A DNA stretch of 62,735 bases from Ranitomeya imitator (lineage: Eukaryota). The first letter of the stretch is position 1. The number at the start of each line of letters is the position of its first letter. The DNA is taken from positions 183,210,001 to 183,272,735 of the forward strand of contig NC_091289.1 of assembly GCF_032444005.1 (NCBI RefSeq), written 5' to 3'. The notes beneath the pieces are model-generated. The model was not told the DNA's origin and did no database searches. It saw only the letters and a list, made by a program, of their open reading frames with translations. Shown piece by piece: positions 32,204 through 57,286 of the stretch. The position numbers and the translations under genes are program-made.

Positions 32204-35200
32204 ATGTTGGAGCACGATGAGGACAGCTCCTCGGAGCCGGACTCTGACCTGGACCCTTCAGAACTGACAGATAAAGAGGTGCTGTGATGGGGGGTTATAC
32301 ATTGCGTTCCCTACTGGGAGACCGGCGAGAGCGTCTCCTATTTTTCATTCTCAGGATCACTGAAAAAGGGCGCAAGCGGGTGAGGGGGCCACAGACCAGA
32401 GCCCCAGTGATCATGAGATGTGGGGAATAACTTTTGAGTACTAAAATCTTGATCAACCAGATCTTAGATAATCTATAATCTGTTATTACATATGTGGTAA
32501 CTTTCCTCTATTTCTCTTGTAGCTGCAAGAAGCCTTCATTCAGGGGAAGCTGAAACCTGGACTAAATCTAGTACTGGATGCAAAGAAAAAGCCGCCTAAT
32601 GATGTGGTGAGTCCAGGTACAAATCCATCCAGAGCTAAAGGTGTCTGCACTGAAGATTTACTGTAATTACCTATATAGAACTAAAATAAACATCTGCTCC
32701 ATAAAGTCAAAGTAAAAATCAATGTAACTCATTGCATATCACATAATGCATATTCTAAGTTGCATCATGTATTTTAATTCAGAGCTGCACTCGCTGTTCT
32801 GCTGGTGCAGTCACTGTGTACATACATTACATTACTGATCCTGAGTTACATCTTGTATTATACTCCAGAGCTGCACTCACTATTCTGCTGGTGCAGTCAC
32901 TGTGTACATACATTACATTACTGGTCCTGAGTTACTTCCTGTATTATACTCCAGAGCTGCACTCACTATTCTGCTGGTGCAGTCACTGTGTACATACATT
33001 ACATTACTGATCCTGAGTTACATCCTGTATTACACTCCAGAGCTGCACTCACTATTCTGCTGCTGCAGTCACTGTACATACATTACATTACTGATCCTGA
33101 GTTACATCCTGTATTATACTCCAGAGCAGCACTCACTATTCTGCTGGTGCAGTCACTGTGTACATACATTACATTACTGATCCTGAGTTACATCCTGTAT
33201 TATACTCCAGAGCTGCACTCGCTATTCTGCTGGTGCAGTCACTGTGTACAGACATTACATTACTGATCCTGAGTTACATCCTGTATTATTCTCCAGAGCT
33301 GCACTCACTATTCTGCTGGTGCAGTCACTGTGTACATACATTAAATTACTGATCCTGAGTTACATCCTGTATTATACTCCAGAGCTGCACACACTATTCT
33401 GCTGGTGCAGTCACTGTGTACATACATTACATTACTGATCCTGAGTTACATCCTGTATTTTACCCCAGAGCTGCACTCACTATTCTGCTGGTGCAGTCAC
33501 TGTGTACATACATTACATTACTGATCCTGAGTTACATCCTATATTATATCCCAGAGCTGCGCTCGCTGTTCTGCTAGTTATTGTAAAGTTTCTGTGATTT
33601 TGTCAGCAGATAAGCACTAGCAGTCTGACTAAGCTCTTGTAATGCAGGTGACTGTACAGTGTCTGGTGCACAGACAACATTTCCACAATGTCTTTTGACA
33701 GCGTGTGCTGTGTGCAGAGGCTAATCAGTCAGGAGATGCTCTGAAGCTTGCAGAGTTATCGCTGCTGATCTGGAGTATAACAAACACAAGCTTTAACTTT
33801 TTGAAACTTGACAACATTTTTGTGTTAGTAAAATTTCTATGTAAAATACCAGAGTCTACTGTTAGGTTCACTAAAGTTTTCAGAGGTTGGGACAAATGTT
33901 AATTCTGGGACTGTCTGTGCAATAATATCTTATTTTTGATTCAGAATGGCCTGAAGCAAAGTCTGAAGGATCTGAAGAAAAACCTGTCCTGGGTGGAGCG
34001 TCTGGATGTAACTACGGCCCCTGTTCCAGACCCAGCACTGCAGAGCAGAGATGAGACACAAGACACTGATGTGGACGCAGAGGACGATTTCAAAAGAGAG
34101 ATGAGCTTGTAAGTGATCTCTGCCGGTGACGGGGACTAATCGTGTGTCTGGACGCGGATGGACTATAGAGATTCACATTTCAGCTGAAACAGTCAGCAAG
34201 CCGATCTACAGAGACACCCCACCATCATAGCTGAGTACTGACAGTGTAGGAGACAGATTATTTTTATTGTCAAATAAGTGATGTAAAGCAACAGACACTG
34301 GGAGGCGTTGGGAACTCCGGGAGATTACCGCTGAAGTGCAGCTCTGGAGTATAGTACAGGATCAGTAATGTATGTACACAGTGACTGCACCAGCAGAATA
34401 GTGACTACAGCTCTGGACTATAATACAGGATGTAACTCAGGATCAGTAATGTATCTACACAGTGACTACACCAGCAGAATAGTGAGTGCAGCTCTGGGGT
34501 ATAATACAGGATGTAACTCAGGATCAGTAATGAAATGTATCTACACAGTGACTACACCAGCAGAATAGTGAGTGCAGCTCTGGGGTATAATACAGGATGT
34601 AACTCAGGATCAGTAATGTATCTACACAGTGACTACACCAGCAGAATAGTGAGTACAGCTCTGGGGTATAATACAGGATGTAACTCAGGATCAGTAATGA
34701 AATGTATCTACACAGTGACTACACCAGCAGAATAGTGAGTGCAGCTCTGGGGTATAATACAGGATGTAACTCAGGATCAGTAATGTTTGTACACAGTGAC
34801 TGCACCAGCAGAATAGTGAGTGCAGCTCTGGGGTATAATACAGGATGTAACTCAGGATCAGTAATGTTTGTACACAGTGACTGCACCAGCAGAATAGTGA
34901 GTGCAGCTTCTGTTGTGATTTTTGTATAATTTCTGTCCTCTGTCCTCAGTTACCGCCAGGCTCAGGCTGCAGTTCTCTTCGCTTTGCCTCGTCTTCAACA
35001 GCTGAAAGTGTCTACAAAACGACCTGAAGATTATTTTGCGGAGATGGCCAAAACTGACCAGCACATGCAGAAGGTTAGTGGATCCCCTCCCAACAGTGTG
35101 AGCAGATTTGGAAGTTTCGTAGAGTTTTATTTTTGCTTTCTGTGTATAAATCGGAGTCAGAGTATAATGGAAGATTCCACAACAGTCCTTTACATTTTGT

Positions 35201-38200: not shown

Positions 38201-39161
38201 GGTGGCAAAAGACCCGGGAAGAAGGGAGGCAAGAACACAAATGTAAGAGAAGGAACCTACAGTACATACACAGAGCAGACACCATAGATATATCATACAC
38301 TATTTTATTCTCCAGAGCTGCACTCACTATTCTTCTGGTGCAGTCACTGTGTACATACATTACATTACTAATCCTGAGTTACCTCCTGTATTATACCCCA
38401 GAGCTGCACTCACTATTCTGCTGGTGCAGTCACTGTGTACATACATTACATTACTGATCCTGAGTTACATCCTGTATTATACCCCAGAGCTGCGCTCACT
38501 ATTCTGCTGGTGCAGTCACTGTGTACATATATTACATTACTGATCCTGATTTACATCCTGTATTATACCCCAGAGCTGCACTCACTATTCTGCTGGTGCA
38601 GTCACTGTGTACAGACATTACATTACTGATCCTGAGTTACATCCTGTATTATACTCCAGAGCTGCACTCACTATTCTGCTGGTGCAGTCACTGTGTACAG
38701 ACATTACATTACTGATCCTGAGTTACATCCTGTATTATACCCCAGAGCTGCACTCACTATTCTGCTGGTGCAGTCACTGTGTACAGACATTACATCACTG
38801 ATCCTGAGTTACATCCTGTATTATACTCCAGAGCTGCACTCACTATTCTGCTGGTGCAGTCACTGTGTACATACATTACATTACTGATCCTGAGTTACAT
38901 CCTGTATTATACCCCAGAGCTGCACTCACTATTCTGCTGGTGCAGTCACTGTGTACATACATTACTGATCCTGAGCTACATCGTGTATTATATTTCAGAG
39001 TGGCTGGGGGGCTTTTATTACCCATCTATGGTGTAACCCTTTATATGCTGCAGTGCTTCACAATAATAAATGTGATTATTCTTTTTTTTTTATTTTCTCT
39101 TTTTATGCAGAAGAGACCGGGTAAGAACGTTCGGCAGAAGATGAAGAATAAGGGACGATGA
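32204..39161 (+). CDS. EBNA1BP2: EBNA1-binding protein 2 (rRNA processing protein EBP2), 305 aa, 9 coding exons
   Basis: Exons 32204-32278, 32523-32606, 33945-34108, 34950-35073, 36028-36117, 36227-36302, 37254-37335, 38071-38242, 39111-39161 total 918 nt, all GT-AG and in phase. Motifs: LSWVERLDVT, EDDFKREMSFYRQAQAAV, KRPEDYFAEMAK, KFGFGGRKKGSK. Confidence 0.96.
32778..33577 (+). repeat. 86-bp tandem array, EBNA1BP2 intron 2
   Basis: About 9 units of CAGAGCTGCACTCACTATTCTGCTGGTGCAGTCACTGTGTACATACATTACATTACTGATCCTGAGTTACATCCTGTATTATACTC. Confidence 0.95.
34335..34908 (-). repeat. 86-bp tandem array in reverse orientation, EBNA1BP2 intron 3
   Basis: About 7 units, reverse complement of the intron 2 array. 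Confidence 0.93.
37377..37689. mobile_element. Palindromic MITE
   Basis: TAGACATGAGCGAATATGTTCGGCTC ... GAGCCGAACATATTCGCGCAACTCTA with long internal inverted arms. Superfamily not assigned. Confidence 0.75.
38310..38998 (+). repeat. 86-bp tandem array, EBNA1BP2 intron 8
   Basis: About 8 units of the same family. Confidence 0.95.
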
Positions 39162-43622: not shown

Positions 43623-45110
43623 GAGTATAACATCCCCACTACCACCACACAGTATAACATCCCCACTACCACCACACGGTATAATGTCCCCACTACCACA
43701 CAATATAATGTCCCCACTACCACACAGTATAATGGCCCCACTACCACCACACGGTATAATGTCCCCACTACCACCACACAGTATAACATCCCCACTACCA
43801 CCACACGCTATAATGTTCCCACTACCACCACACAGTATAATGTCCCCACTACCACCACACGGTATAATGTCCCCACTACCACACAATATAATGTCCCCAC
43901 TACCACAAAGTATAATGGCCCCACTACCACCACACAGTATAATGTCCCCACTACCACCACACAGTATAACATCCCCACTACCACCACACGCTATAATGTC
44001 CCCACTGCCACCACACAGTATAATGTCCCCACTACCACCACACGGTATAATGTCCCCACTACCATACAATATAATGTCCCCACTACCACCACACGGTATA
44101 ATGTCCCCACTACCACCACACGGTATAACTTCCCCACTACCACCACACAGTATAACATCCCCACTACCACCACACGCTATAATGTCCCCACTACCACCAC
44201 ACAGTATAACTTCCCAACTTCCACCACACGGTATAATGTCCCCACTACCACACAATATAATGTCCCCACTACTACCACACAGTATAATGGCCTCACTACC
44301 ACCACACGGTATAATGTCCCCACTACCACCACACGGTATAATGTCCCCACTACCACCACACGATATAATGTCCCCACTACCACCACACGGTATAATGTCC
44401 CCACTACCACCACACGGTATAACGTCCCCACAACCACCACACGGTATAACGTCCCCACAACCACCACACGGTATAACGTCCCCACAACCACCACACGGTA
44501 TAACGTCCCCACTACCACCACACAGTATAACGTCCCCACAACCACCACACAGTATAACATCCCCACTACCACCACACAGTATAACGCCCCCACAACCACC
44601 ACCACACAGTGTAATGGCCCCAACAGATGCCTCCACACAGTATATTGTCCTCCACACAGTGTAATGCCCCCTCTGCCCCCACACAGTATAACGTCCTAAA
44701 TACCACCACACAGTATAATGGCCCCAATAGATCCCCAACACAGTATAATGCCCTCATTGCCCCCCACACAGTATAATGGCCCCCACAGATCCCCCTAAAA
44801 AATATAATGGCCTCCACAGTTCCCCCCACACAGTAAAATGGCTCGCACAGATCCCCCCACACAGTATAATGGTCCCCAAAGATGCCACTACACAGTATAA
44901 TGACCCCAACAGATACCCCCACACAGATCTCTCTAGACCGTATAATGGCCCTCCACAAATCCCCCCACACAGTATGATGCCCCCATTGCTACCCACACAG
45001 TATGATGCTCCCACAGCTCCCCTCCACATAATATGATGACCCCAATGTCCCCTACACAGTATAATGTCCCAACGGCTCCCCCCATATAGTATGATAAGCC
45101 CAGTCACGCA
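43623..45110. repeat. 24/27-bp C-rich minisatellite (TATAATGTCCCCACTACCACCACAC), homogeneous to about 44640 and degenerate beyond
   Basis: Direct reading. It explains the spurious long ORFs in several frames. Confidence 0.92.
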
Positions 45111-45337
45111 CCCAGTATGATGTCCCTTTACGCCAGTGGAAATAAAAAAAAAACCCTAGCCTAAAAGACGCAGATATAATTAAATACAGGTAGACAGCCC
45201 TGAACCTGGCAGTGAGACTGGGGTGAATTCATGAAAGGGGGCAGGCGGATGAAGATACAGTCCGTCATCGCCCATTTAATGGCTCGGGATCGGTCGGTGT
45301 CACGCACCATCAGGCGCCTTCACATGTCCGTTTTTAA

Positions 45338-46390: not shown

Positions 46391-47274
46391 GTAAAGCCGC
46401 TGCCAGCAGATCTGTGCATGTAGTGACTGGTGGGGTGTAATGTATCTGTCAGTGCTGGGATGTGACGCCATCAATGGCTCACTGTGGCCACCAGATCTGA
46501 TATGAGCCATGTACATGTCATAGTAAAATTCCTTTCATCCGGCACTTACAGGGATTAATTTGGTAATTGATTAATTTGTCTTTATTTTTAGTGGCATTTC
46601 TGGATTATTAAAGGGGTATTCCACTGTTATGAGTGACCCACTGCTGAGGGTCCCACCACTGGGACTCCAATGGTTCCTGAGATCGGGGCTCTGCAGTGTC
46701 CCACCTGAATGAAGTGATGGTTGGGTATATTCAGCACCGTCCGCTCATTCATTGTCTTTCGGACAGCTGGGAATGGCCGGTGGTCTCCTCAATCCCAGGA
46801 TCCATAGGGACCCAATGGTGGGACCCTCAACAATAGGCCACAACTTACTGTTATTGGAAAGACCCTTTAATAAGACAGAAATTCCACAACAAATGAAGCA
46901 TAAAATGCCGGTAACTTATCTAATTTTCCATCTCTGGTAGAAGCTGCTGTAAAGCCCTCAGAGCACAACTCTGTGATTGATGTGGATGTTGACAGCGGAA
47001 AAATACTGCGTTACTGGGATCTGCCCCTATTAGCTGGTGTTGGTGGTGGGGGTCTCCTTTTGATCATGGTGCCCACCTATTTCTCACTGGACAATTTATC
47101 TATTTTACTCCCTTATATAGCGCCATCATATTCCGCATCACTGTCCCCATTGGGGCTCACAATCTAGATTCCCTATCAGTATGTCTTTGGAGTGCGGGAG
47201 GAAACCCCCAAGGCCATGGGGAGAACACACAAGCTCCTTGCTGAGTGACAACCTTTGCCTCCTCTTTCAGGAAG

Positions 47275-50200
47275 ATGAATCTGGCCGACCACCTGTCCCC
47301 GGAGATCCAGAGCAGCGTCGCCATCGAATATCTGAATGCATCTGGACAGACACTGAAACGTAAAGTCATTCGTAACGCCTTCACCTCGCTGGGACGTAAT
47401 GAATTTCGGGAGCTGGTGCTGAAGGTCAGTGATGGGAAGTTACCCCAAAACTTCATCCTGAGGCAGATCCAGATCTTCACCCGCTTCATTCAAGATGGGA
47501 AGAGCTCCATCGTGCTCCAGCCGGATAATGTCCAGCTGCTGATCTCCAACTGCCCCTCGGACAAACTGAAGCACTTTATGAAAATCTTAATGATTAAGCA
47601 CGAGGCGGGGAAGAGTGAGAAGCCGGTGAATGAGCGCATGCGTCTGCTGTCAGGGCTCCCACGTGTGTTCGAGACCATCAGTCCTGTACAGAAGAAGGAC
47701 TTGGAGCAAGCCAATGAAATGCGAGCAAAACTCAGCAGTCAGACGCCCTTAAAGGGGAAGGGGCTCAGTAACCGTGGAATCAACGCTGCAAACCGATGTC
47801 CACAGAAACGTCCAAGGACGGCATCATCCGAGAACAGTCTGGTAGGTTGCAAGACAGAGCGGCATTCCTTTACTGATCCTGAGTTACATCCTGTATTATA
47901 CCCCAGAGCTGCACTCACTATTCTGCTGGTGCAATCACTGTGTACATACATTACATTACTGATCCTGAGTCACATCCTGTATTATACTCTAGAGCTGCAC
48001 TCACTATTCTGCTGGTGCAGTCACTGTATACATACATTACTGATCCTGAGTCACATCCTGTATTATACCCCAGAGCTGCACTCACTATTCTGCTGGTGCA
48101 GTCACTGTGTACATACATTACATTACTGATCCTGAGTTACCTCCTGTATTATACCCCAGAGCTGCACTCACTATTCTGCTGGTGCAGTCACTGAGTACAT
48201 GCATTACTGATCCTGAGTTACATCCTGTATTATACTCCAGAGCTGCACTCACTATTCTGCTGGTGCAGTCACTGTGTACATACATTACATTACTGATCCT
48301 GAGTTACATCCTGTATTATACTCCAGAGCTGCACTCACTATTCTGCTGGTGCAGTCACTGTGTACATACATTACATTACTGATCCTGAGTTACATCCTGT
48401 ATTATACCCCAGAGCTGCACTCACTATTCTGCTGGTGCAGTCACTGAGTACATGCATTACTGATCCTGAGTTACATCCTGTATTATACTCCAGAGCTGCA
48501 CTCACTATTCTGCTGGTGCAGTCACTGTGTACATACATTACATTACTGATCCTGAGTTACATCCTGTATTATACCCCAGAGCTGCACTCACTATTCTGCT
48601 GGTGCAGTCACTGAGTACATGCATTACTGATCCTGAGTTACATCCTGTATTATACTCCAGAGCTGCACTCACTATTCTGCTGGTGCAGTCACTGTGTACA
48701 TACATTACATTACTGATCCTGAGTTACATCCTGTATTATACTCCAGAGCTGCACTCACTATTCTGCTGGTGCAGTCACTGTGTACATACATTACATTACT
48801 GATCCTGAGTTACATCCTGTATTATACCCCAGAGCTGCACTCACTATTCTGCTGGTGCAGTCACTGAGTACATGCATTACTGATCCTGAGTTACATCCTG
48901 TATTATACTCCAGAGCTGCACTCACTATTCTGCTGGTGCAGTCACTGTGTACATACATTACATTACTGATCCTGAGTTACATCCTGTATTATACCCCAGA
49001 GCTGCACTCACTATTCTGCTGGTGCAGTCACTGAGTACATGCATTACTGATCCTGAGTTACATCCTGTATTATACTCCAGAGCTGCACTCACTATTCTGC
49101 TGGTGCAGTCACTGTGTACATACATTACATTACTGATCCTGAGATTAAAATGTTACTTTTCAGCTTCTTCCATAAACACAAGACACTGGACACCAAGTAC
49201 ATTTATTTACTGTCTGATGAGTAGAATTCCAGAACTGCAGTGCATAGTGTCACCTCTATCTGTTTCATGTCTCGGACCTCAGGAAAGGTCAGAATTGGCT
49301 GTGAGTAGATCTATTGATCTATGTTGTATTTTACATAACTTCAGTATTTGATTTGTAGATTTCTGAGCTCCGTCCCAGTAAGAAGCCGACTCTGACCATG
49401 CCCCGCCAGCTGCATCTCTCCACTGAGCAGTCCATGGTTCTCAGCACCGTCCTCAGCGGGAAGAATGTGTTCTTCACAGGAAGCGCAGGTCGGTGCAGAC
49501 GACTTCTAATTATTGATTTATAGCAAAGAAATATATCACCAACTACTTTTAGATATAAATATTATTTTTATTTTGTATATTTTTTTCTAGTTGTCTTGAT
49601 TCGTCCTGCAGTGTGAAGAATGGAGGCTTTTATTATATCTTGATCTGTGAACTTCTGATCCATTCTTAATATATTATCTTTCTCCTTATTTCCAGGCACA
49701 GGAAAGTCTTATCTGCTGAAGAGGATTATCGGGGCTCTGCCCCCTAAAAGCACTTATGCCACAGCAAGTACCGGGGTGGCAGCCTGTCATATTGGCGGCA
49801 CCACATTACATGCCTTTGCAGGTGAGAATTAACCTAATAACTGGTGCATCAATCCATTAGAGGTTTTTTTTTAATATATATATCTCAAACACACATATAT
49901 CTGCGATGGCCTATGGGGGGAGCTATCCTGGTGCATCACTGAAAGGTCTTCATGGCATCTACAATGGCCTGCATCAGCTATAGAGACACATGATAAGATT
50001 GGTTCCACCTGCAGCAACACTAGGGGGAGCTCTTTGCATACATCTAAATGTGTACATTTTTGCTCCCCCTAGTGGAGCCTTTTATATTACTGTTTTAGCA
50101 ATGATGAATGATGGTAGTTGTCTTCTATGGTCAGATCTTTCCTATGTTTTATCTTGGTTTTAGGGATCGGTTCAGGGAAGGCTCCACTGGAACAATGTGT

Positions 50201-53200
50201 AGACTTGGCCAAGAGGCCGGGGGTCCGTCAGCACTGGATAAGCTGCCGACAGCTGATCATAGATGAGATCTCCATGGTGGAAGGGGAGTTCTTTGATAAG
50301 CTGGAGGCTGTCGCCAGGTATGGAGGCTGCTCTGGTGGGCAGTTTCTGTGTGGGTCGTGTCGAGGCTGAATACTAAGCCGTATTGTCGTCCCTCGCAGGG
50401 CGGTCCGCGGGCGGGATGAGCCTTTCGGTGGGATCCAGCTCATCGTTTGTGGAGACTTTCTGCAACTTCCACCAGTGACTCGGGCCTCAAATCAGACCAA
50501 GTTCTGCTTCCAGGTAGGAATCTTCATTACCATCAATTGGCAGGTTCCAAAGTTTCATCACCCCTCAAAATGTTGCCCCTGACGGGAGCTGAAGTGATGC
50601 ATTGGGGTCCAGTGTCTTTTGTGTTTACGGACAAATGGAAGAAGCTGAAAAGTAACAATTTGTGCCTCTCTGCTAATAACCGGCATCTTGCTGCTCCACA
50701 GACCAAAAGCTGGAGGAGATGCATCAACCTGACCATGGAGCTGACGGAAGTGCGGAGACAGACGGACAAGAAGTTCATCGCTCTGCTGCAGTCGATTCGT
50801 CTGGGCAGGTGAGGGGGAACGGGTCGCTGGGTGCATTGTCGGGGCAGGTGACGGCAAACGGGTTCCTGTGTGCATTGTAGGGGAAGGTGAGAGCAGATGG
50901 GTCCCTGTGTGCATTGTAAGGAGAAGTGAGAGCAGGTGGGTCACTGTGCGCATTGTGGGGGCAGGTGAGGACGGACAGGTCACTGTGTGCATTGTAGGGG
51001 AAGATGAGAGCAGATGGGTCGCTGTGTGCATTGTAGGTGTAGGTGAGGGTGGATGGGTCGCTGTGTGCATTGTGAGGGTGGACGGGTCACTGTGTGCATT
51101 GTGGGGGTAGGTGAGGGTGGATGGGTCCCTGTGTGCATTGTAGGGAGAAGTGAGAGCGGATGCGTCACACTGTGCATTGTGGGGGAAGGTGAGAGCAGAT
51201 GGGTCGCTGTGTGCATTGTAGGGAGAATTGAGAGCAGATGGGTCCCTGTGTGCATTGTAGGGAGAAGTGAGAGCGGATGGGTCCCTGTGCGCATTGTAAG
51301 GAGAAGTGAGAGCAGGTGGGTCACTGTGCGCATTGTGGGGGCAGGTGAGGACGGACAGGTCACTGTGTGCATTGTAGGGGAAGATGAGAGTGGATGGGTC
51401 GCTGTGTGCATTGTAGGGGTAGGTGAAGGTGGATGGGTCGCTGTGTGCATTGTGGGGGTAGGTGAAGGTGGATGTGTCCCTGTGCGCATTGTAAGGAGAA
51501 GTGAGAGCAGGTGGGTCACTGTGCGCATTGTGGGGGCAGGTGAGGACGGACAGGTCACTGTGTGCATTGTAGGGGAAGATGAGAGTGGATGGGTCGCTGT
51601 GTGCATTGTAGGGGTAGGTGAAGGTGGATGGGTCGCTGTGTGCATTGTGGGGGTAGGTGAAGGTGGATGGGTCGCTGTGTGCATTGTGGGGTACGTGATG
51701 GCGGATGAGTCACTGTGTGCGTTGTGGGGACATGTGAGGGTTGACAGGTCTCTGTGCATTGTGGGGGGCAGGTGAGGGCGGACGGGTTACTGTGTGCATT
51801 GTTGGAGGAGGTGAAGGCAGATGGGTTGGTGGGCATGGTGGCGGCTGGTGCATTTTGCAGGGCTAAGACTCAGTTTGCTCTGACAACGTTTCGCTTTTGT
51901 GGCATGCTGGGATTTGTAGTTGCAAAATATTATGATGATGTAGAACCTTTAGAGCCAGACAGACCTATTATTAATCACGATTTTCCAGGTAGCTGTCTCG
52001 AAGTTCGCTCCACACCCATAGGCTGTTCCGTCATGTCAGTGGCAGCAGCGCTTTACTAGTCCGTTTATAAATCCTCATGCTGCCTCGCTATGTTGACTTC
52101 CCCATTAACTGCCCTAAGTGAAGTCTGTATTGTGGCCTATATTAATAGGGACTGAAAAAGATTAAGAATTTTGTAAAAATAGCGCCACCCTCATCAACAG
52201 GTTGTGTATGATACTGCCATTCGTTGCAATGGAGCTGAACTGCAGTACCTAACTCAACCAGTAGATTAAGGTGGTGCTGTTTCTAGAAGAAAGTGGTCTT
52301 ATTTTGCTAATTCTGTACAATCCCTTTATATCACTGGGCACTGAACATTTTGCCATCAGATGCACTGAAGAGGTGACGAGGCAGCTGTTACTGACGGGGA
52401 ACCACAAAATCGAACGGGACGGGATTCTGGCGACGCGGCTCTGCACCCACAAGGACGATGTTGACCTGACGAACGAGCGCAGATTACAGCAACTACCTGG
52501 TATGGATGGGACCCTGATACAGCTGATGGTGGAGCACATGCTGATCAGCCCTTTGTGGGCCACTATCATGGCTGCTGCTTGATAGTGGAGTAACACATGA
52601 CTGCAGGGTCTGACTACACAGTGTGTTAGTAGTCTGTTACCATGGTTACCTTCACAGTTAGTTCATTTTTTTTTTTTTAACTTTGGCTGCGCAATAAGTC
52701 TGCATCGCCTTTTAAGGAACGGGCTATGCGGAGCAGTCCTCCCATCCCCCCTCTGATTGCAGTGATACATGGCGCTCTGTTCTGTCTGCAGGGGAGATGC
52801 ACAAGTACGACGCCCTGGACAGTGACCCGATGCTGGTGAAGACTGTGAACGCGCAGTGTCCTGTCGGGGAGCAGATCCTGCTGAAGAAAGGGGCGCAGGT
52901 GAGCGGACGGCGAGGGCCCCTTCCTGTGCTGGAGCCTTGTCCTTGTGCAGATGCTAAAATCTCTGTTGTCCATGTTGTGGGAGATCAGACTGTAAGCAGG
53001 GACGATCCGAGCTTTACTCTAGGGTCTTCCTTAAGGGTCTCCTGCGGCGCTGAGGACGGCAGATATGTGCACGATTGTCAGGGTTCTGCCGACACAACTC
53101 CCCGTGTGAAAGAAACTGACGCTGGAGATCCCTTTAAAATGTCCATATTCCCACTATATTCTTCTTGTAATGATGGTGTCTTCTACTCCACTCAGCTCCA

Positions 53201-56200
53201 GAGCAGCATTCACAATTCTGCTGAGTACCATTTGGAATTTGTGATGGCCTGTCAGTTTGGTGAACATCCCATAATGCACCATGTGATCTGAATGGGTCCG
53301 TGTTTTCCATTATCAGTACAGACCCCGCTCTCAATCCCCCCCGACCCATACTGTGACTAATCATTCCCACCATGCAATGCAACAGCGCACGCTCTGCAGA
53401 TGCTGAACCAGCAGAGGGGGCAGCAGTAGAATATCCAATATCTGTGGGCCAACAGGAAATCGGCAAAACTGACCGCAGATCTGGTTGTGACTGGAGTATA
53501 AGGCCTCATCAATTTCGTCTGAAGACTTCGCTCCCTTAATTCTCTGATTGCAGGTGATGCTGGCCAAGAATCTGGACGTCGCCCGCGGTTTAGTGAACGG
53601 AGCGCGAGGAGTCATCGTTGGGTTTGAAGGGACAGAAAGACGTAAGTGATAAAGCAAATGCTGAGAATCCATAAGATAATAGTGACACCTGCCCCCAGTT
53701 CTAAAGCGCAGACTGTACTCCCTTCCCTTCCATTACTGAGATAGAAGATTACAGTTGGTGCTTTTAGGATTCTATGGAAGGAGGAGCGAGAGGCCGACAG
53801 ACATTCCGCTGCAAATTCTAAAGCGTCAGTTAAACTTTGAATGACTGGATACAATGTATCTATTCTGGTCGGAGAACACGTCCTATCCATACTGGAGGCC
53901 TCGTCACTAAACTGTCCGTTACCCCACTGCAGCCCTAAATCCAGGCTTCTTGATCCCCTCTGACCTACTGTGTTCAGTCTTCTTTGATTTTCTCATCTTT
54001 TGCTCACAAATTGGAACTTCTTGTTCCTCTCTTCAGCTTTGCCCAAAGTGCGTTTCCTGTGTGGGGTCACGGAGGTCATGAAGCCGGAGCGCTGGGTTAT
54101 TAAGGCTCACGGCGGCGTCCTCCTGAGCCGACAGCAGTTACCTCTGAAGCTGGCGTGGGCCATTTCCATACACAAGAGTCAGGTACGTCGTCCTGCGCCC
54201 AAGGAACGTCCGGTGTGCTGCTGTGTGGCCAATGTCTGATTCGGGATGTTTCTGCAGGGGATGACGCTGGACTGTGTGGAGATCTCGCTGTCCCGTGTGT
54301 TTGAGAGCGGACAGGCGTATGTAGCGCTCTCCAGAGCTCGCAGCTTAGAGGGGCTACGGGTCATGGATTTTGATCCCAAAGCCGTAACTGCCAATCCCTA
54401 TGTTCTCCAATTCTACGCCAGACTGAGGAAGGAGCGAGCGCTGTACCAGGTGAGGGGTAGAAGGACAAGGTGGGGGTATGATCGGGATAGGCTTGCATTA
54501 TAGTAGTTATATTCTTGTGCATAGTGGCAGTATTATAGTAGTTCTATTCTTGTACATAGGGGCAGTATTATAGTAGTTATATTCTTGTACATAGGAGCAG
54601 TATTAGGCCGGAGTCACACTACTGCGAGATACGGCCGAGTCTCGCTGGTTAAAAGCAAGCTCTGGCACCGGAACTCCGGAGCCGAGCGTGCAGCTCCATG
54701 TATTGCTATGCAGCCGCATGCTCCGCTCCGGAGTGCTGGTGCCAGAGCTTGTTTTTTTTTTAAATTCGTTTATTAATTTCAGAATAGACAAACATTGCAC
54801 ATATTACATTTATCATTATTAAACATACTCAGAGCTTGTTTTTAACCTGCGATACTGGGCCGTATCTTGCTGTGTGTGTTCCCGGTCTTAAAGTAGTTAT
54901 ATTCTTGTACATAGGAACAGTATTATAGTAGTTATATTCTTGTACATAGGAACAGTATTATAGTAGTTATATTCTTGTACATAGGAGCAGTATTACAGTA
55001 GTTATATTATTGTACATAGGGGCAGTATTATAGCAGTTATATTCTTGTACATAGGAGCAGTATTATAGTAGTTATATTCTTGTACATAGGGGCAGTATTA
55101 TAGTAGTTATATTCTTGTACATAGGGGCAGTATTATAGTAGTTATATTCTTGTACATAGGAGCAGTATTACAGTAGTTATATTATTGTACATAGGGGCAG
55201 TATTATAGCAGTTATATTCTTGTACATAGGAGCAGTATTATAGTAGTTATATTCTTGTACATAGGGGCAGTATTATAGTAGTTATATTCTTGTACATAGG
55301 GGCAGTATTATAGTAGTTATATTCTTGTACATAGGAGCAGTATTATATAGTTATACTCTTGTAAATAGTGGCAGTATTATAGTAGTCATATTCTTGTACA
55401 TAGGAGCAGTATTATAGTAGTTATATTCTTGTACATAGGAGCAGTATTATAGTAGTTATATTCTTGTACATAGGGGCAGTATTATAGTAGTTATATTCTT
55501 GTACATAGGGGCAGTATTATAGTAGTTATATTCTTGTACATAGGAGCAGTATTATAGTAGTTATATTATTGTACATAGGAGCAGTATTATAGTAGTTATA
55601 TTCTTGTACATAAGGGGCAGTATTATAGTAGTTATATTCTTGTACATAGGGGCAGTATTATAGTAGTTATATTCTTGTACATAGGGGCAGTATTATAGTA
55701 GTTACCGTATATACTCGAGTATAAGCCGAGATTTTCAGCCCAAATTTTTGGGCTGAAAGTGCCCCTCTCGGCTTATACTCGAGTCAAGGTGGGTGAGGGG
55801 GTGAGGGCGCTGAGGTATACTTACCGAGTCCCAGCGATCCTGGCTCTCCCCGCCTGTCCCACGGTCTTCTGTGCTGCAGCTTCTTCCCCTCTTCAGCGGT
55901 CACGTGGGACCGCTCATTAGAGAAATGAATAGGCGGCTCCACCTCCCATAGGGGTGGAGCCGCCTATTCATTTCTCTAATCAGCGGTGCCGGTGACCGCT
56001 GATAGAGGAAGAGGCTGCAGCACCGAAGACAGCTGTCCGGGACAAGGAGCGGGACACCGGGACCAGGTAAGTATGTAATATTCACCTATCCCCGTTCCAG
56101 CCGCCGGGCGCCGCTCCATCTTCCCGGCGTCTCTGCGCTCTGACTGTTCAGGTCAGAGGGCGCGATGACGCATATAGTGTGCGCGGCGCCCTCTGCCTGA

Positions 56201-57286
56201 TCAGTCAGAGCAGAGAGACGCCGGGACGGGACGCTGGGAGCTGCAAGCAAGAGAGGTAAGTATGGCTTTTTTTTTTTTATTGCAGCGGCAGTAGCGGCAC
56301 AGATTTATGTGGAGCATCTATGGGGAAATATGAATGGTGCAGAGCACTATATGGCACAGCTATGGGGCAATAATGAACGGTGCAGAGCACTGTATGGCAC
56401 AGCTATGGGGCAGTATGAACGGTGCAGAGCACTGTATGGCACAGCTATGGGGCAGTATGAAGGGTGCAGAGCACTATATAGCACAGCTATGGGGAAATAA
56501 TGAACGGTGCAGAGCACTATATGGCACAGCAATGGGGAAATAATGATCTATTTTTATTTTTGAAATTCACCGGTAAATGCTGCATTTCCACCCTAGGCTT
56601 ATACTCGAGTCAATAAGTTTTCCCAGTTTTTTTGTGGCAAAATTAGGGGGGTCGGCTTATACTCGAGGATATACGGTACATTCTTGTACATAGGGGGCAG
56701 TATTATAGTAGTTATATTCTTGTACATAGGAGCAGTATTATAGTAGTTATATTCTTGTACATAGGAGCAGTATTATAGTAGTTATATTCTTGTACATAGG
56801 GGCAGTATTATAGCAGTTATATTTTTGTACATAGGAGCAGTATTATAGCAGTTATAATCTTGTACATTGGAGCAGTATTATAGCAGTTATATTCTTGTAC
56901 ATAGGAAGTATTATAGTAGCTATATTATTGTACATAGGGGCAGTATTATAGTAGTTATATTTTTGTACATAGGAGCAGTATTATAGCAGTTATATTCTTG
57001 AACATAGGAGCAGTATTATAGCAGTTATATTCTTGTACATAGGAGCAGTATTATAGTAGTTATATTCTTGTACATAGGAAGTATTATAGTAGTTATATTC
57101 TTGTACATAGGAAGTATTATAGTAGCTATATTATTGTACATAGGGGCAGTATTATACTATATTGTAGTTGTTGGTACTGGCCTTATTAATAAGGTATACA
57201 TGTGTTTAATCTAAAAATTATGGTTCTTTGTTTTCCCCCTCTCGCAGACATGTCTGGATCCTTACCTGGTGGACAAGGAGAATTGA
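47275..57286 (+). CDS. PIF1: ATP-dependent 5'-3' DNA helicase PIF1, 636 aa, 12 coding exons
   Basis: Exons 47275-47841, 49359-49488, 49696-49821, 50164-50317, 50399-50513, 50702-50808, 52360-52499, 52792-52898, 53554-53641, 54037-54182, 54258-54449, 57248-57286 total 1911 nt. Motifs: Walker A GSAGTGKS, Walker [48 protein letters not shown], plus the N-terminal LGRNEFREL domain. The last exon ([12 protein letters not shown]) is less certain. Confidence 0.95.
47872..49143 (+). repeat. 81/86-bp tandem array, first coding intron of PIF1
   Basis: About 15 units alternating 86- and 81-bp variants, starting 30 bp after the donor. Confidence 0.95.
50809..51830 (+). repeat. 39-bp G-rich minisatellite beginning at a PIF1 splice donor
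   Basis: First unit is GTGAGGGGGAACGGGTCGCTGGGTGCATTGTCGGGGCAG; about 26 units. Confidence 0.92.
54606..54887. mobile_element. Harbinger-like MITE containing a short retro-insertion
   Basis: TTA-GGCCGGAGTCACAC ... GTGTGTTCCCGGTC-TTA. Confidence 0.65.
55705..56676. mobile_element. pogo/Tc2-like non-autonomous element (TA TSD) with an internal ~45-bp repeat
   Basis: TA-CCGTATATACTCGAGTATAAGCC ... GGCTTATACTCGAGGATATACGG-TA. Confidence 0.8.

What the first reader, a model, noticed from the sequence alone, without database searches (positions are those of the whole stretch)
50809..51830. A minisatellite made of amplified 5' splice sites inside PIF1
The 39-bp array starts at intron nucleotide +1. 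Unit boundaries read (c/a/t)AG|GTGAG, so the repeat appears to have amplified the exon-intron junction itself. The authentic donor 9-mer CAG|GTGAGG recurs exactly at GT positions 50965, 51345, 51540 and 51772 (spacings 4x39 and 5x39 in places), with many weaker variants. Reading past the authentic donor gives AGG TGA (stop at 50810-50812), so any downstream donor produces a truncated, NMD-type transcript. The array is therefore a copy-number-variable battery of poison donors, or AG|GT recursive-splicing-like sites, that could tune PIF1 dosage. The sequence facts are direct; the regulatory role is inference.
Basis: partly seen in the sequence, partly recalled or inferred. Interest (0 to 1): 0.7.

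Follow-up and report, generated by a model that had tools for sequence, protein, structure and literature searches.

The report
Splice-donor minisatellite in frog PIF1 intron
A 39-base repeat that grew out of an exon/intron boundary of the PIF1 helicase gene places many look-alike splice-start signals in the intron, but the transcripts I could see use only the first, genuine one, as in known human genes such as F7, so this is a new example of a known kind.

Summary
A 39-bp x ~26 minisatellite (50803-51826) fills the first kilobase of a 1,551-nt PIF1 intron. Its first unit spans the exon/intron boundary. The donor 9-mer CAGGTGAGG recurs exactly at the four places named, and an in-frame TGA follows the real donor.

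The regulatory reading is not supported:
- Spliced contigs from three RNA studies all join 50808 to 52360. None starts from an internal donor, although contigs hide rare isoforms.
- Three of the four exact copies lie in recently duplicated blocks (98% identical).
- The donor 9-mer is among the least conserved parts of the unit.
- The first pseudo-site is weak.
- The AG|GT sites lack a pyrimidine tract, so recursive splicing is unlikely.

A second frog carries the array at the same donor with a different unit arrangement.

This class is already described: human F7 intron 7 (37-bp VNTR, first monomer spans the boundary, pseudo-sites silent), IFI6, CBS, LMNB2 and PDGFA (PMC1557585). The scan has noted the same kind in other genes of this genome (EMC1, NECAP1, FLVCR1, MED21, ofd1, GALNS).

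Verdict: real, a new member of a known kind, most likely a silent by-product of tandem duplication.

One loose end remains: one RNA run holds about 117 nt from the distal array only.

The parts
50702..50808 (+). PIF1 coding exon (107 nt) ending ...CTG GGC AG|
   Evidence: Aligns to human PIF1 residues 161-195 (6hph, E 2e-9). Borders fixed by spliced contigs in X7, X8 and X18.
50806..50814 (+). Authentic 5' splice site CAG|GTGAGG (GT at 50809)
   Evidence: Joint 50808|52360 with GT..AG ends in contigs of three studies. Approximate PWM score 7.3 bits.
50810..50812 (+). In-frame TGA directly after the authentic donor
   Evidence: ORF 50447..50812 ends here.
50809..52359 (+). Intron, 1,551 nt, phase 2
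   Evidence: Joint 'skips 1551', GT..AG. Human residue 196 is split across it.
50801..51841 (+). 39-bp minisatellite of 27 units, including a 29-bp truncated unit and a degenerate last unit. The first unit is the last 6-8 nt of the exon plus the first 31-33 nt of the intron.
   Evidence: TRF 50803-51826. Unit alignment. Exon-tail homology. Base composition G 45.6%, C 11.9%.
50962..50970 (+). Pseudo-donor identical to the authentic 9-mer (unit 5)
   Evidence: Lies in the block 50918-51034, which recurs at 51298 and 51493.
51342..51350 (+). Pseudo-donor identical to the authentic 9-mer (unit 15, a block copy of unit 5)
51537..51545 (+). Pseudo-donor identical to the authentic 9-mer (unit 20, a block copy of unit 5)
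51769..51777 (+). Pseudo-donor identical to the authentic 9-mer (unit 26, an independent variant)
50845..50853 (+). First pseudo-site CAG|GTGACG, weakened at +5
   Evidence: Approximate PWM score 3.3 bits.
50884..50892 (+). Strong pseudo-donor AAG|GTGAGA (also at 51186-51194). TAG|GTGAGG lies at 51040-51048 and 51108-51116.
   Evidence: Approximate PWM scores 6.8 and 5.7 bits, against 4.5 for the real donors at 50318 and 50514.
51298..51687 (+). Two copies of a 195-bp (5-unit) higher-order block, 51298-51492 and 51493-51687
   Evidence: 98.5% identical. 50918-51034 is 98.3% identical to 51298-51414.
51623..51739 (.). Only part of the array seen in an RNA run: two adjacent unitigs of X7
   Evidence: table 8, records 15 and 16. 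No mismatches, depth 3.5-5.2. Unexplained.
52360..52500 (+). Next PIF1 exon
   Evidence: Aligns to human PIF1 residues 197-242 (E 1e-17). Contig borders. Donor CTG|GTATGG follows at 52501.

Best explanation
This is an exon/intron-boundary minisatellite of the F7-intron-7 type.

Origin (inferred): a 39-bp segment made of the last 6-8 nt of a PIF1 exon and the first 31-33 nt of the intron was duplicated in tandem. It then expanded by slippage or unequal exchange to about 26 units. The most recent steps were duplications of multi-unit blocks.

Consequence: every unit inherited a copy of the donor, so the intron begins with a row of pseudo-5' splice sites.

Splicing (shown): the mRNA is made from the authentic, most upstream donor.

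Why the pseudo-sites stay silent (inferred by analogy with the F7 experiments): in a run of neighbouring donors the spliceosome takes the first functional one next to the defined exon. The pseudo-sites are therefore silent or nearly so, and they are decaying by mutation.

The array is most likely a tolerated, near-neutral by-product of a genome very rich in minisatellites. It is not a dosage device.
For: - The array is real and local.
- The first unit spans the boundary.
- The canonical joint 50808|52360 appears in contigs of three RNA studies, one of them a 2,084-nt contig across four exons. No joint starts at an internal donor.
- Three of four exact 9-mers lie in blocks that are 98% identical.
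- The donor 9-mer window ranks 4th-5th least conserved of 39 circular windows. Conservation of the G at -1, +1 and +5 is 0.76, against 0.84-0.92 for other G columns.
- The first pseudo-site is weakened.
- No RNA structure hides the sites: the fold z-score is +2.1.
- A second organism has the array at the same donor with a different unit arrangement.
- Tandem arrays cover 17% of the window, 20 arrays in 62.7 kb.
- Precedent with 50 minigene constructs: F7 IVS7. Further listed cases are IFI6, CBS, LMNB2 and PDGFA (PMC1557585; PMC6627357).
Against: - Only contigs were available, not raw reads. Isoforms below roughly a tenth of the message, or ones removed by NMD, would be missed.
- Eleven internal sites score at least as high as other real donors of this gene.
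- In IFI6 and CBS the two nearest pseudo-sites are used (PMC1557585).
- One RNA run (X7) holds about 117 nt of the distal array at exon-like depth. The model does not predict this.
- The donor scores come from an approximate matrix recalled from memory, not from MaxEntScan.
Confidence: 0.75

Rival explanations
1. The pseudo-donors are used at a meaningful rate. Each use includes the TGA at 50810 and sends the transcript to NMD. Unit number therefore sets PIF1 dosage.
For: - Four sites are identical to the real donor, and seven more are stronger than other real PIF1 donors.
- The stop is in frame.
- Unit arrangement differs between two organisms.
- IFI6 and CBS use their two nearest pseudo-sites (PMC1557585).
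Against: - No such joint appears in contigs of three studies.
- The donor columns are the least conserved part of the unit.
- The exact copies are explained by block duplication.
- The nearest pseudo-site is weak.
- F7, LMNB2 and PDGFA arrays are silent.
Confidence: 0.07
2. The G-rich array acts as an intronic splicing enhancer or U1-recruiting platform. G triplets and U1-binding motifs downstream of the donor would reinforce use of the authentic site, or protect the transcript from premature cleavage.
For: - GGG runs number 4.6 per 100 nt in the array, against 0.95 in the rest of the intron.
- There are many U1-complementary motifs.
- G-triplet enhancers are an established mechanism (McCullough and Berget 1997 and 2000, cited in PMC1557585).
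Against: - The authentic donor is already strong.
- In F7 no autonomous intronic regulatory element was found (section heading; discussion).
- Nothing here tests function.
Confidence: 0.08
3. Part of the distal array is a cryptic cassette exon or a stable intron-derived RNA. One possible layout is an acceptor-like TTGTAG|G near 51611 and the donor at 51772.
For: X7 holds two adjacent unitigs, 51623-51739, at depth 3.5-5.2, like its exons. It holds nothing from the proximal array or from the unique part of the intron.
Against: - The signal is seen in one of three RNA runs only.
- No joint links it to either exon.
- A single PCR-duplicated pre-mRNA fragment would look the same.
- The contig runs past one candidate donor, at 51734.
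Confidence: 0.05
4. The G-rich minisatellite forms G-quadruplexes and is itself a substrate of PIF1, giving a self-referential link between the helicase and its own gene.
For: - Yeast Pif1 prevents instability of the G-rich minisatellite CEB1 (PMC2673046).
- The array is 46% G on the sense strand. 14% of 25-nt windows reach G4Hunter 1.2 or more, against 1.3% in the whole window.
Against: - There is no canonical G3 motif with loops of 7 nt or less, and only one with loops up to 12 nt.
- Mean G4Hunter is 0.81.
- The same kind of array is noted in unrelated genes of this genome.
Confidence: 0.03

Closest known systems
Human F7 intron 7 VNTR (37 bp, 5-9 copies); Borensztajn et al. 2006, PMC1557585
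   Same: - Unit length is almost the same: 37 against 39 bp.
- The first monomer is the last few nt of the exon plus about 33 nt of intron.
- The donor is reiterated in the following monomers.
- Only the most upstream donor appears in mRNA.
- Copy number varies.
   Different: - The array here is about 26 units rather than 5-9, and it has a 195-bp higher-order block.
- The pseudo-sites have diverged: 4 are identical, and 8 of 25 in-register sites are strong. In F7 they are strictly identical.
- The donor is strong (CAG|GTGAGG) rather than weak (TGG|GTGGGT).
- No minigene or mutant data exist here.
Human IFI6 (6-16) intron 2 minisatellite (Turri et al. 1995) and CBS intron 13 31-bp VNTR, as summarised in PMC1557585
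   Same: A minisatellite starts at the exon/intron border and supplies multiple donor sites.
   Different: In those genes the two nearest pseudo-sites are used constitutively. Here no pseudo-site use is seen, and any use would meet a stop codon at once.
Human LMNB2 (100-bp) and PDGFA intron 4 (81-bp) boundary repeats, as summarised in PMC1557585
   Same: The repeat reiterates the exon/intron junction, and only the authentic donor is used.
   Different: Their units are longer and their copy numbers lower (10-18).
Recursive splice sites (AG|GT ratchet points)
   Same: The AG|GT dinucleotide pair occurs at unit borders.
   Different: - There is no pyrimidine tract: 45-50% pyrimidine, with G5 directly before CAG.
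- The intron is only 1.55 kb.
- No intermediate is seen.

Membership tests
Exon/intron-boundary minisatellite (F7 IVS7 type) | Tandem array of 10-100-bp units inside an intron | tested here: met
   39 bp x 26.6 copies, 50803-51826, within intron 50809-52359.
Exon/intron-boundary minisatellite (F7 IVS7 type) | First monomer spans the exon/intron boundary | tested here: met
   Unit 1 is 50801-50839. The exon's last 8 nt match unit 2 at 7 of 8 positions. A 14-nt gapped match has p = 0.02.
Exon/intron-boundary minisatellite (F7 IVS7 type) | The donor sequence is reiterated in downstream monomers | tested here: met
   Four exact 9-mers, and 8 of 25 in-register sites read NAG|GTGAG.
Exon/intron-boundary minisatellite (F7 IVS7 type) | mRNA uses the most upstream (authentic) donor, and pseudo-sites are silent or only the nearest are used | tested here: met
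   Only the joint 50808|52360 appears in contigs of X7, X8 and X18. Minor isoforms are not excluded, because only contigs were available.
Exon/intron-boundary minisatellite (F7 IVS7 type) | Copy number is polymorphic | tested here: inconclusive
   A second organism's contigs show 'goes back 78' (2 units) and 'skips 466' (about 12 units) relative to the window. Variation within the species was not tested.
Recursive splice site | A strong 3' splice site (pyrimidine tract plus AG) fused to a 5' splice site, in a long intron | tested here: not met
   45-50% pyrimidine with a G5 run before CAG. Intron is 1,551 nt.
NMD-coupled regulatory alternative splicing (poison donor or exon) | A stop-containing isoform is detectable, and its splice sites are conserved | tested here: not met
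   No alternative joint in contigs (weak test). The donor columns are the least conserved of the unit.
G-quadruplex-forming minisatellite (CEB1 type) | Four or more G3 runs with short loops in each unit | tested here: not met
   No G3 motif with loops of 1-7 nt, and one with loops of 1-12 nt.
G-triplet intronic splicing enhancer | G triplets downstream of the donor that enhance its use | not testable with these tools
   The density requirement is met: 4.6 against 0.95 per 100 nt. Function needs mutagenesis.

The most novel reading that the evidence does not exclude
Donor-spanning minisatellites may be systematically generated or preferentially retained in this frog lineage. The scan has noted them in at least seven other genes. 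Some, like this PIF1 array with its X7 RNA signal, may yield array-derived RNA or low-level poison isoforms. The genome would then be a natural allelic series for testing how the spliceosome chooses among tandem 5' splice sites.
Probability: 0.12. Interest if true: 0.55.

Novelty: new member of a known kind. Interest (0 to 1): 0.3.

Why it matters
As a single locus it matters little. It adds PIF1 in a frog to the short list of genes whose splice donor has been amplified into a minisatellite, and it shows again that the first donor wins.

Its value is as material. With about 26 units, four identical pseudo-sites and a graded series of weaker ones, it is a natural test bed for the 'most upstream site' rule of 5' splice-site choice established on human F7.

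Together with the other cases noted in this genome, it suggests that junction duplications at donors are tolerated. The probable reason is that the first copy keeps working.

Tried and rejected
- **RNA test, partial.** The look-up of sequencing runs listed no holder on record as RNA. Three low-share runs proved to be RNA by their spliced contigs. Only Logan contigs were served, so starts, strands and rare junctions could not be read.
- **Homology deeper into the exon.** It was not significant against internal units further down the array (p 0.17-0.88). Only the first unit boundary gives p = 0.02.
- **Derivation from a dispersed repeat.** The unit core is absent elsewhere in the window. A 14-nt match, GTCACTGTGT[G/A]CAT, to the 86-bp family has p of about 0.005 per family. 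After about 12 family tests it is marginal. I rejected it as an origin.
- **Masking RNA structure.** Rejected: the fold z-score is +2.1, less structured than shuffles.
- **G-quadruplex reading.** Rejected on motif counts.
- **Recursive splicing.** Rejected on pyrimidine content.
- **Literature access.** The first paper search timed out. Turri et al. 1995 (PMC306954) is not held, so it is cited only through PMC1557585.
- **Not done.**
  - MaxEntScan and SpliceAI are not installed, so I used an approximate matrix from memory.
- I did not run the large protein searches.
  - I did not touch the N runs at 60662-60856 and 60988-61118.

Full report
**The observation**

Tandem Repeats Finder reports one array at 50803-51826, with period 39, 26.6 copies and 79% matches. 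I split it on the invariant GCATTGT anchor. This gives 27 units, one of them truncated to 29 bp (51074-51102) and the last degenerate. The 19-nt core GGGTCACTGTGTGCATTGT occurs 25 times at up to 3 mismatches, all inside the array, against 0.02 expected. The unit family is therefore local to this intron within the 62.7-kb window.

The 9-mer CAGGTGAGG lies at 50806, 50962, 51342, 51537 and 51769. The window holds 8 matches on both strands against 0.69 expected, and no shuffle reached 8.

The exon frame reads AGG TGA across the donor, so the stop is at 50810-50812 (ORF 50447..50812).

**The gene and the intron**

The translation of 50702-50806 aligns to human PIF1 residues 161-195. The translation of 52361-52498 aligns to residues 197-242 (PDB 6hph; E 2e-9 and 1e-17). 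Residue 196 is split across the intron. An upstream exon matches Pfam PF05970, PIF1-like helicase.

Spliced contigs fix the borders:
- Exon 50702-50808.
- Intron 50809-52359, 1,551 nt, with GT..AG ends.
- Exon 52360-52500.

I searched the exons one by one, by reference, and did not build a joined model.

**Anatomy of the array**

The repeat register begins inside the exon. Unit 1 (50801-50839) starts CTGGGCAG|GTGAGG, and unit 2 starts CGGGGCAG|GTGACG. The exon tail ATTCGTCTGGGCAG aligns to the unit 1/unit 2 boundary ATT-GTCGGGGCAG at 12 of 14 positions (shuffle p = 0.02). Units further down share only GGGCAG with the exon.

The exon end encodes the conserved RLGR of PIF1, so the exon sequence is the older one. 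I infer that the seed was a 39-bp segment spanning the junction.

The array is not a set of independent copies:
- 51298-51492 and 51493-51687 are 98.5% identical. This is a 195-bp block of five units.
- 50918-51034 is 98.3% identical to 51298-51414.
- Three of the four internal exact 9-mers lie in the same unit variant of this block. Only two independent unit variants carry the exact donor.

**Are the donor motifs maintained?**

They are not. In the unit alignment the base frequencies at the donor positions are: -3, 27%; -1 G, 65%; +1 G, 81%; +5 G, 73%; +6, 58%. The 3' half of the unit, CTGTGTGCATTGT, is 92-100% conserved.

Using only full-length units, the nine donor columns rank 4th-5th least conserved of 39 circular nine-column windows. 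The three critical G columns score 0.76, against 0.84-0.92 for other G columns.

The in-register sites fall into these classes:

| Site | Count |
|---|---|
| CAG\|GTGAGG | 4 |
| AAG\|GTGAGA | 2 |
| TAG\|GTGAGG | 2 |
| GAA\|GTGAGA | 5 |
| TAG\|GTGAAG | 4 |
| AAG\|ATGAGA (GT lost) | 3 |
| Singletons | 5 |

I scored the sites with an approximate donor weight matrix. Its frequencies are recalled from the textbook consensus, so they are my own knowledge and not MaxEntScan values. Four sites equal the authentic donor at 7.3 bits. Seven more score 5.7-6.8 bits, including three out-of-register CAG|GTGGGT sites. The real PIF1 donors at 50318 and 50514 score 4.5 bits. The first pseudo-site, 50848 CAG|GTGACG, scores only 3.3 bits.

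The battery of donor-grade motifs is therefore real, but it shows decay rather than maintenance.

**RNA evidence**

The run search listed no holder on record as RNA. Three low-share runs from three studies (X7, X8, X18) proved to be RNA, because their contigs carry GT..AG joints. All three show the joints 50513|50702 and 50808|52360. X8 has a 2,084-nt contig across four exons. No contig joins an internal donor to 52360.

Contigs drop rare variants. This shows that the authentic donor is the main one. It does not show that pseudo-sites are never used.

One result is unexplained. X7 alone holds two adjacent unitigs inside the array, 51623-51691 and 51662-51739. They have no mismatches and a depth of 3.5-5.2, similar to that run's exons. 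X7 holds nothing from the first units, nothing that fits two places (so the 195-bp block is not covered), and nothing from the unique 51842-52356. Read-through to a distal pseudo-donor would require the whole proximal array, so this is not that. Three explanations remain open:
- A PCR-duplicated pre-mRNA fragment.
- A cryptic cassette exon.
- A stable intron fragment.

**A second organism**

DNA contigs of a second organism label (X3) run unbroken from 50100 through the exon and donor to 50850, with 15 differences and 2 gaps over 751 nt. None of the differences listed (table cut to the best supported) lies between 50658 and 50864. Short contigs then continue inside the array.

A 2,005-nt contig joins a unit like 51245-51297 directly to 51764-52662, recorded as 'skips 466', about 12 units. 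Another contig 'goes back 78', which is 2 units.

The array therefore predates the split of the two organisms and begins at the same donor in both. Its unit arrangement differs between them. Variation within the species was not tested.

**Other readings tested**

- Recursive splicing. The 20 nt before each strong AG|GT are 45-50% pyrimidine and end in GGGGG. Real acceptors of this gene are 55-65% pyrimidine. The intron is short.
- Masking structure. The exon plus the first five units fold worse than shuffles, with z = +2.1.
- G-quadruplex. The array is 45.6% G and 11.9% C, with 4.6 GGG runs per 100 nt. It has no G3 motif with loops of 7 nt or less, and mean G4Hunter is 0.81. The link to PIF1's known role at the G-rich minisatellite CEB1 (PMC2673046) is best taken as coincidence.
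- G-triplet enhancer. The density fits, but function cannot be tested here.

**Comparison with what is known**

The class is described. Borensztajn et al. [quoted passage not shown]

In human F7 intron 7 the 37-bp monomer is the last 4 bp of exon 7 plus 33 bp of intron, in 5-9 copies. The pseudo-sites are functional but silent. In 50 constructs the most upstream functional site was always chosen.

The same paper lists further cases:
- IFI6/6-16: 25 pseudo-sites, of which the two nearest are used.
- CBS intron 13: 15-20 repeats, of which two are used.
- LMNB2 and PDGFA: only the authentic site is used.

A later review repeats the F7 picture (PMC6627357).

The PIF1 array meets the features that define this class (see the membership table). 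It differs in having more units, a higher-order block, diverged pseudo-sites and a strong authentic donor.

**Context in this genome**

Tandem arrays cover 17% of the window, 20 arrays in 62.7 kb. Another PIF1 intron has an 86/167-bp array starting 21 nt after its donor at 47842.

After I had found the F7 precedent, I looked up the scan's earlier notes. They list the same kind of array in EMC1, NECAP1, FLVCR1, MED21, ofd1 and GALNS of this genome. They name the organism as a poison frog, probably Ranitomeya imitator. I did not test those notes.

A rough inference follows. At 3.2e-4 array starts per bp, a 39-bp seed spans a given junction with probability of about 0.012. A handful of such cases among the windows scanned therefore needs no special mechanism. 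Duplications across a donor are also tolerated, because the first copy keeps working.

**Verdict**

The sequence facts are right. The origin from the junction is supported. The regulatory 'poison donor' role is not supported by the available RNA, by the pattern of conservation, or by the experimental precedent.

This is a new member of a known kind. Its interest is modest, mainly as a natural substrate for experiments on splice-site choice.

Noticed in passing
window 47245-47850 (+): The N-terminal coding exon of PIF1 matches Pfam PF25344, the LRR1 pleckstrin-homology domain (E 2e-17, residues 21-127). The non-helicase N-terminus of vertebrate PIF1 therefore looks like a PH domain related to that of the CMG-unloading factor LRR1.
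   Followed up: no
window 47863-49143; also 32758-33575, 34357-34908 (minus strand), 38305-38992: An 86/167-bp minisatellite family occurs four times in the window. One copy starts 21 nt after the donor (GT at 47842) of the first coding PIF1 intron. It shares a 14-nt core, GTCACTGTGT[G/A]CAT, with the 39-bp unit. This is marginal after multiple testing.
   Followed up: partly
window 51623-51739: RNA run X7 holds two unitigs from the distal array only, at exon-like depth. No other intron coverage and no joint to an exon is seen.
   Followed up: partly
window 52584-52645: A short stretch of the next intron is a highly repeated element. Depth is 57-66 in the DNA run of the second organism, and there are many different loose ends in all four runs, including the RNA runs.
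   Followed up: no
window 59017-59700 (+) and 61354-62390 (-): ORFs with the look of Tc1/mariner transposase remnants, for example ...VQMDNDPKHTSKATQEF...SPDLNPIEH.... The identification is from my own knowledge and was not scanned.
   Followed up: no
window 43624-45126, 54888-55704, 56680-57156: Further long minisatellites (27-bp x 43, 35-bp x 23, 35-bp x 14) flank PIF1. Tandem arrays make up 17% of the window.
   Followed up: no
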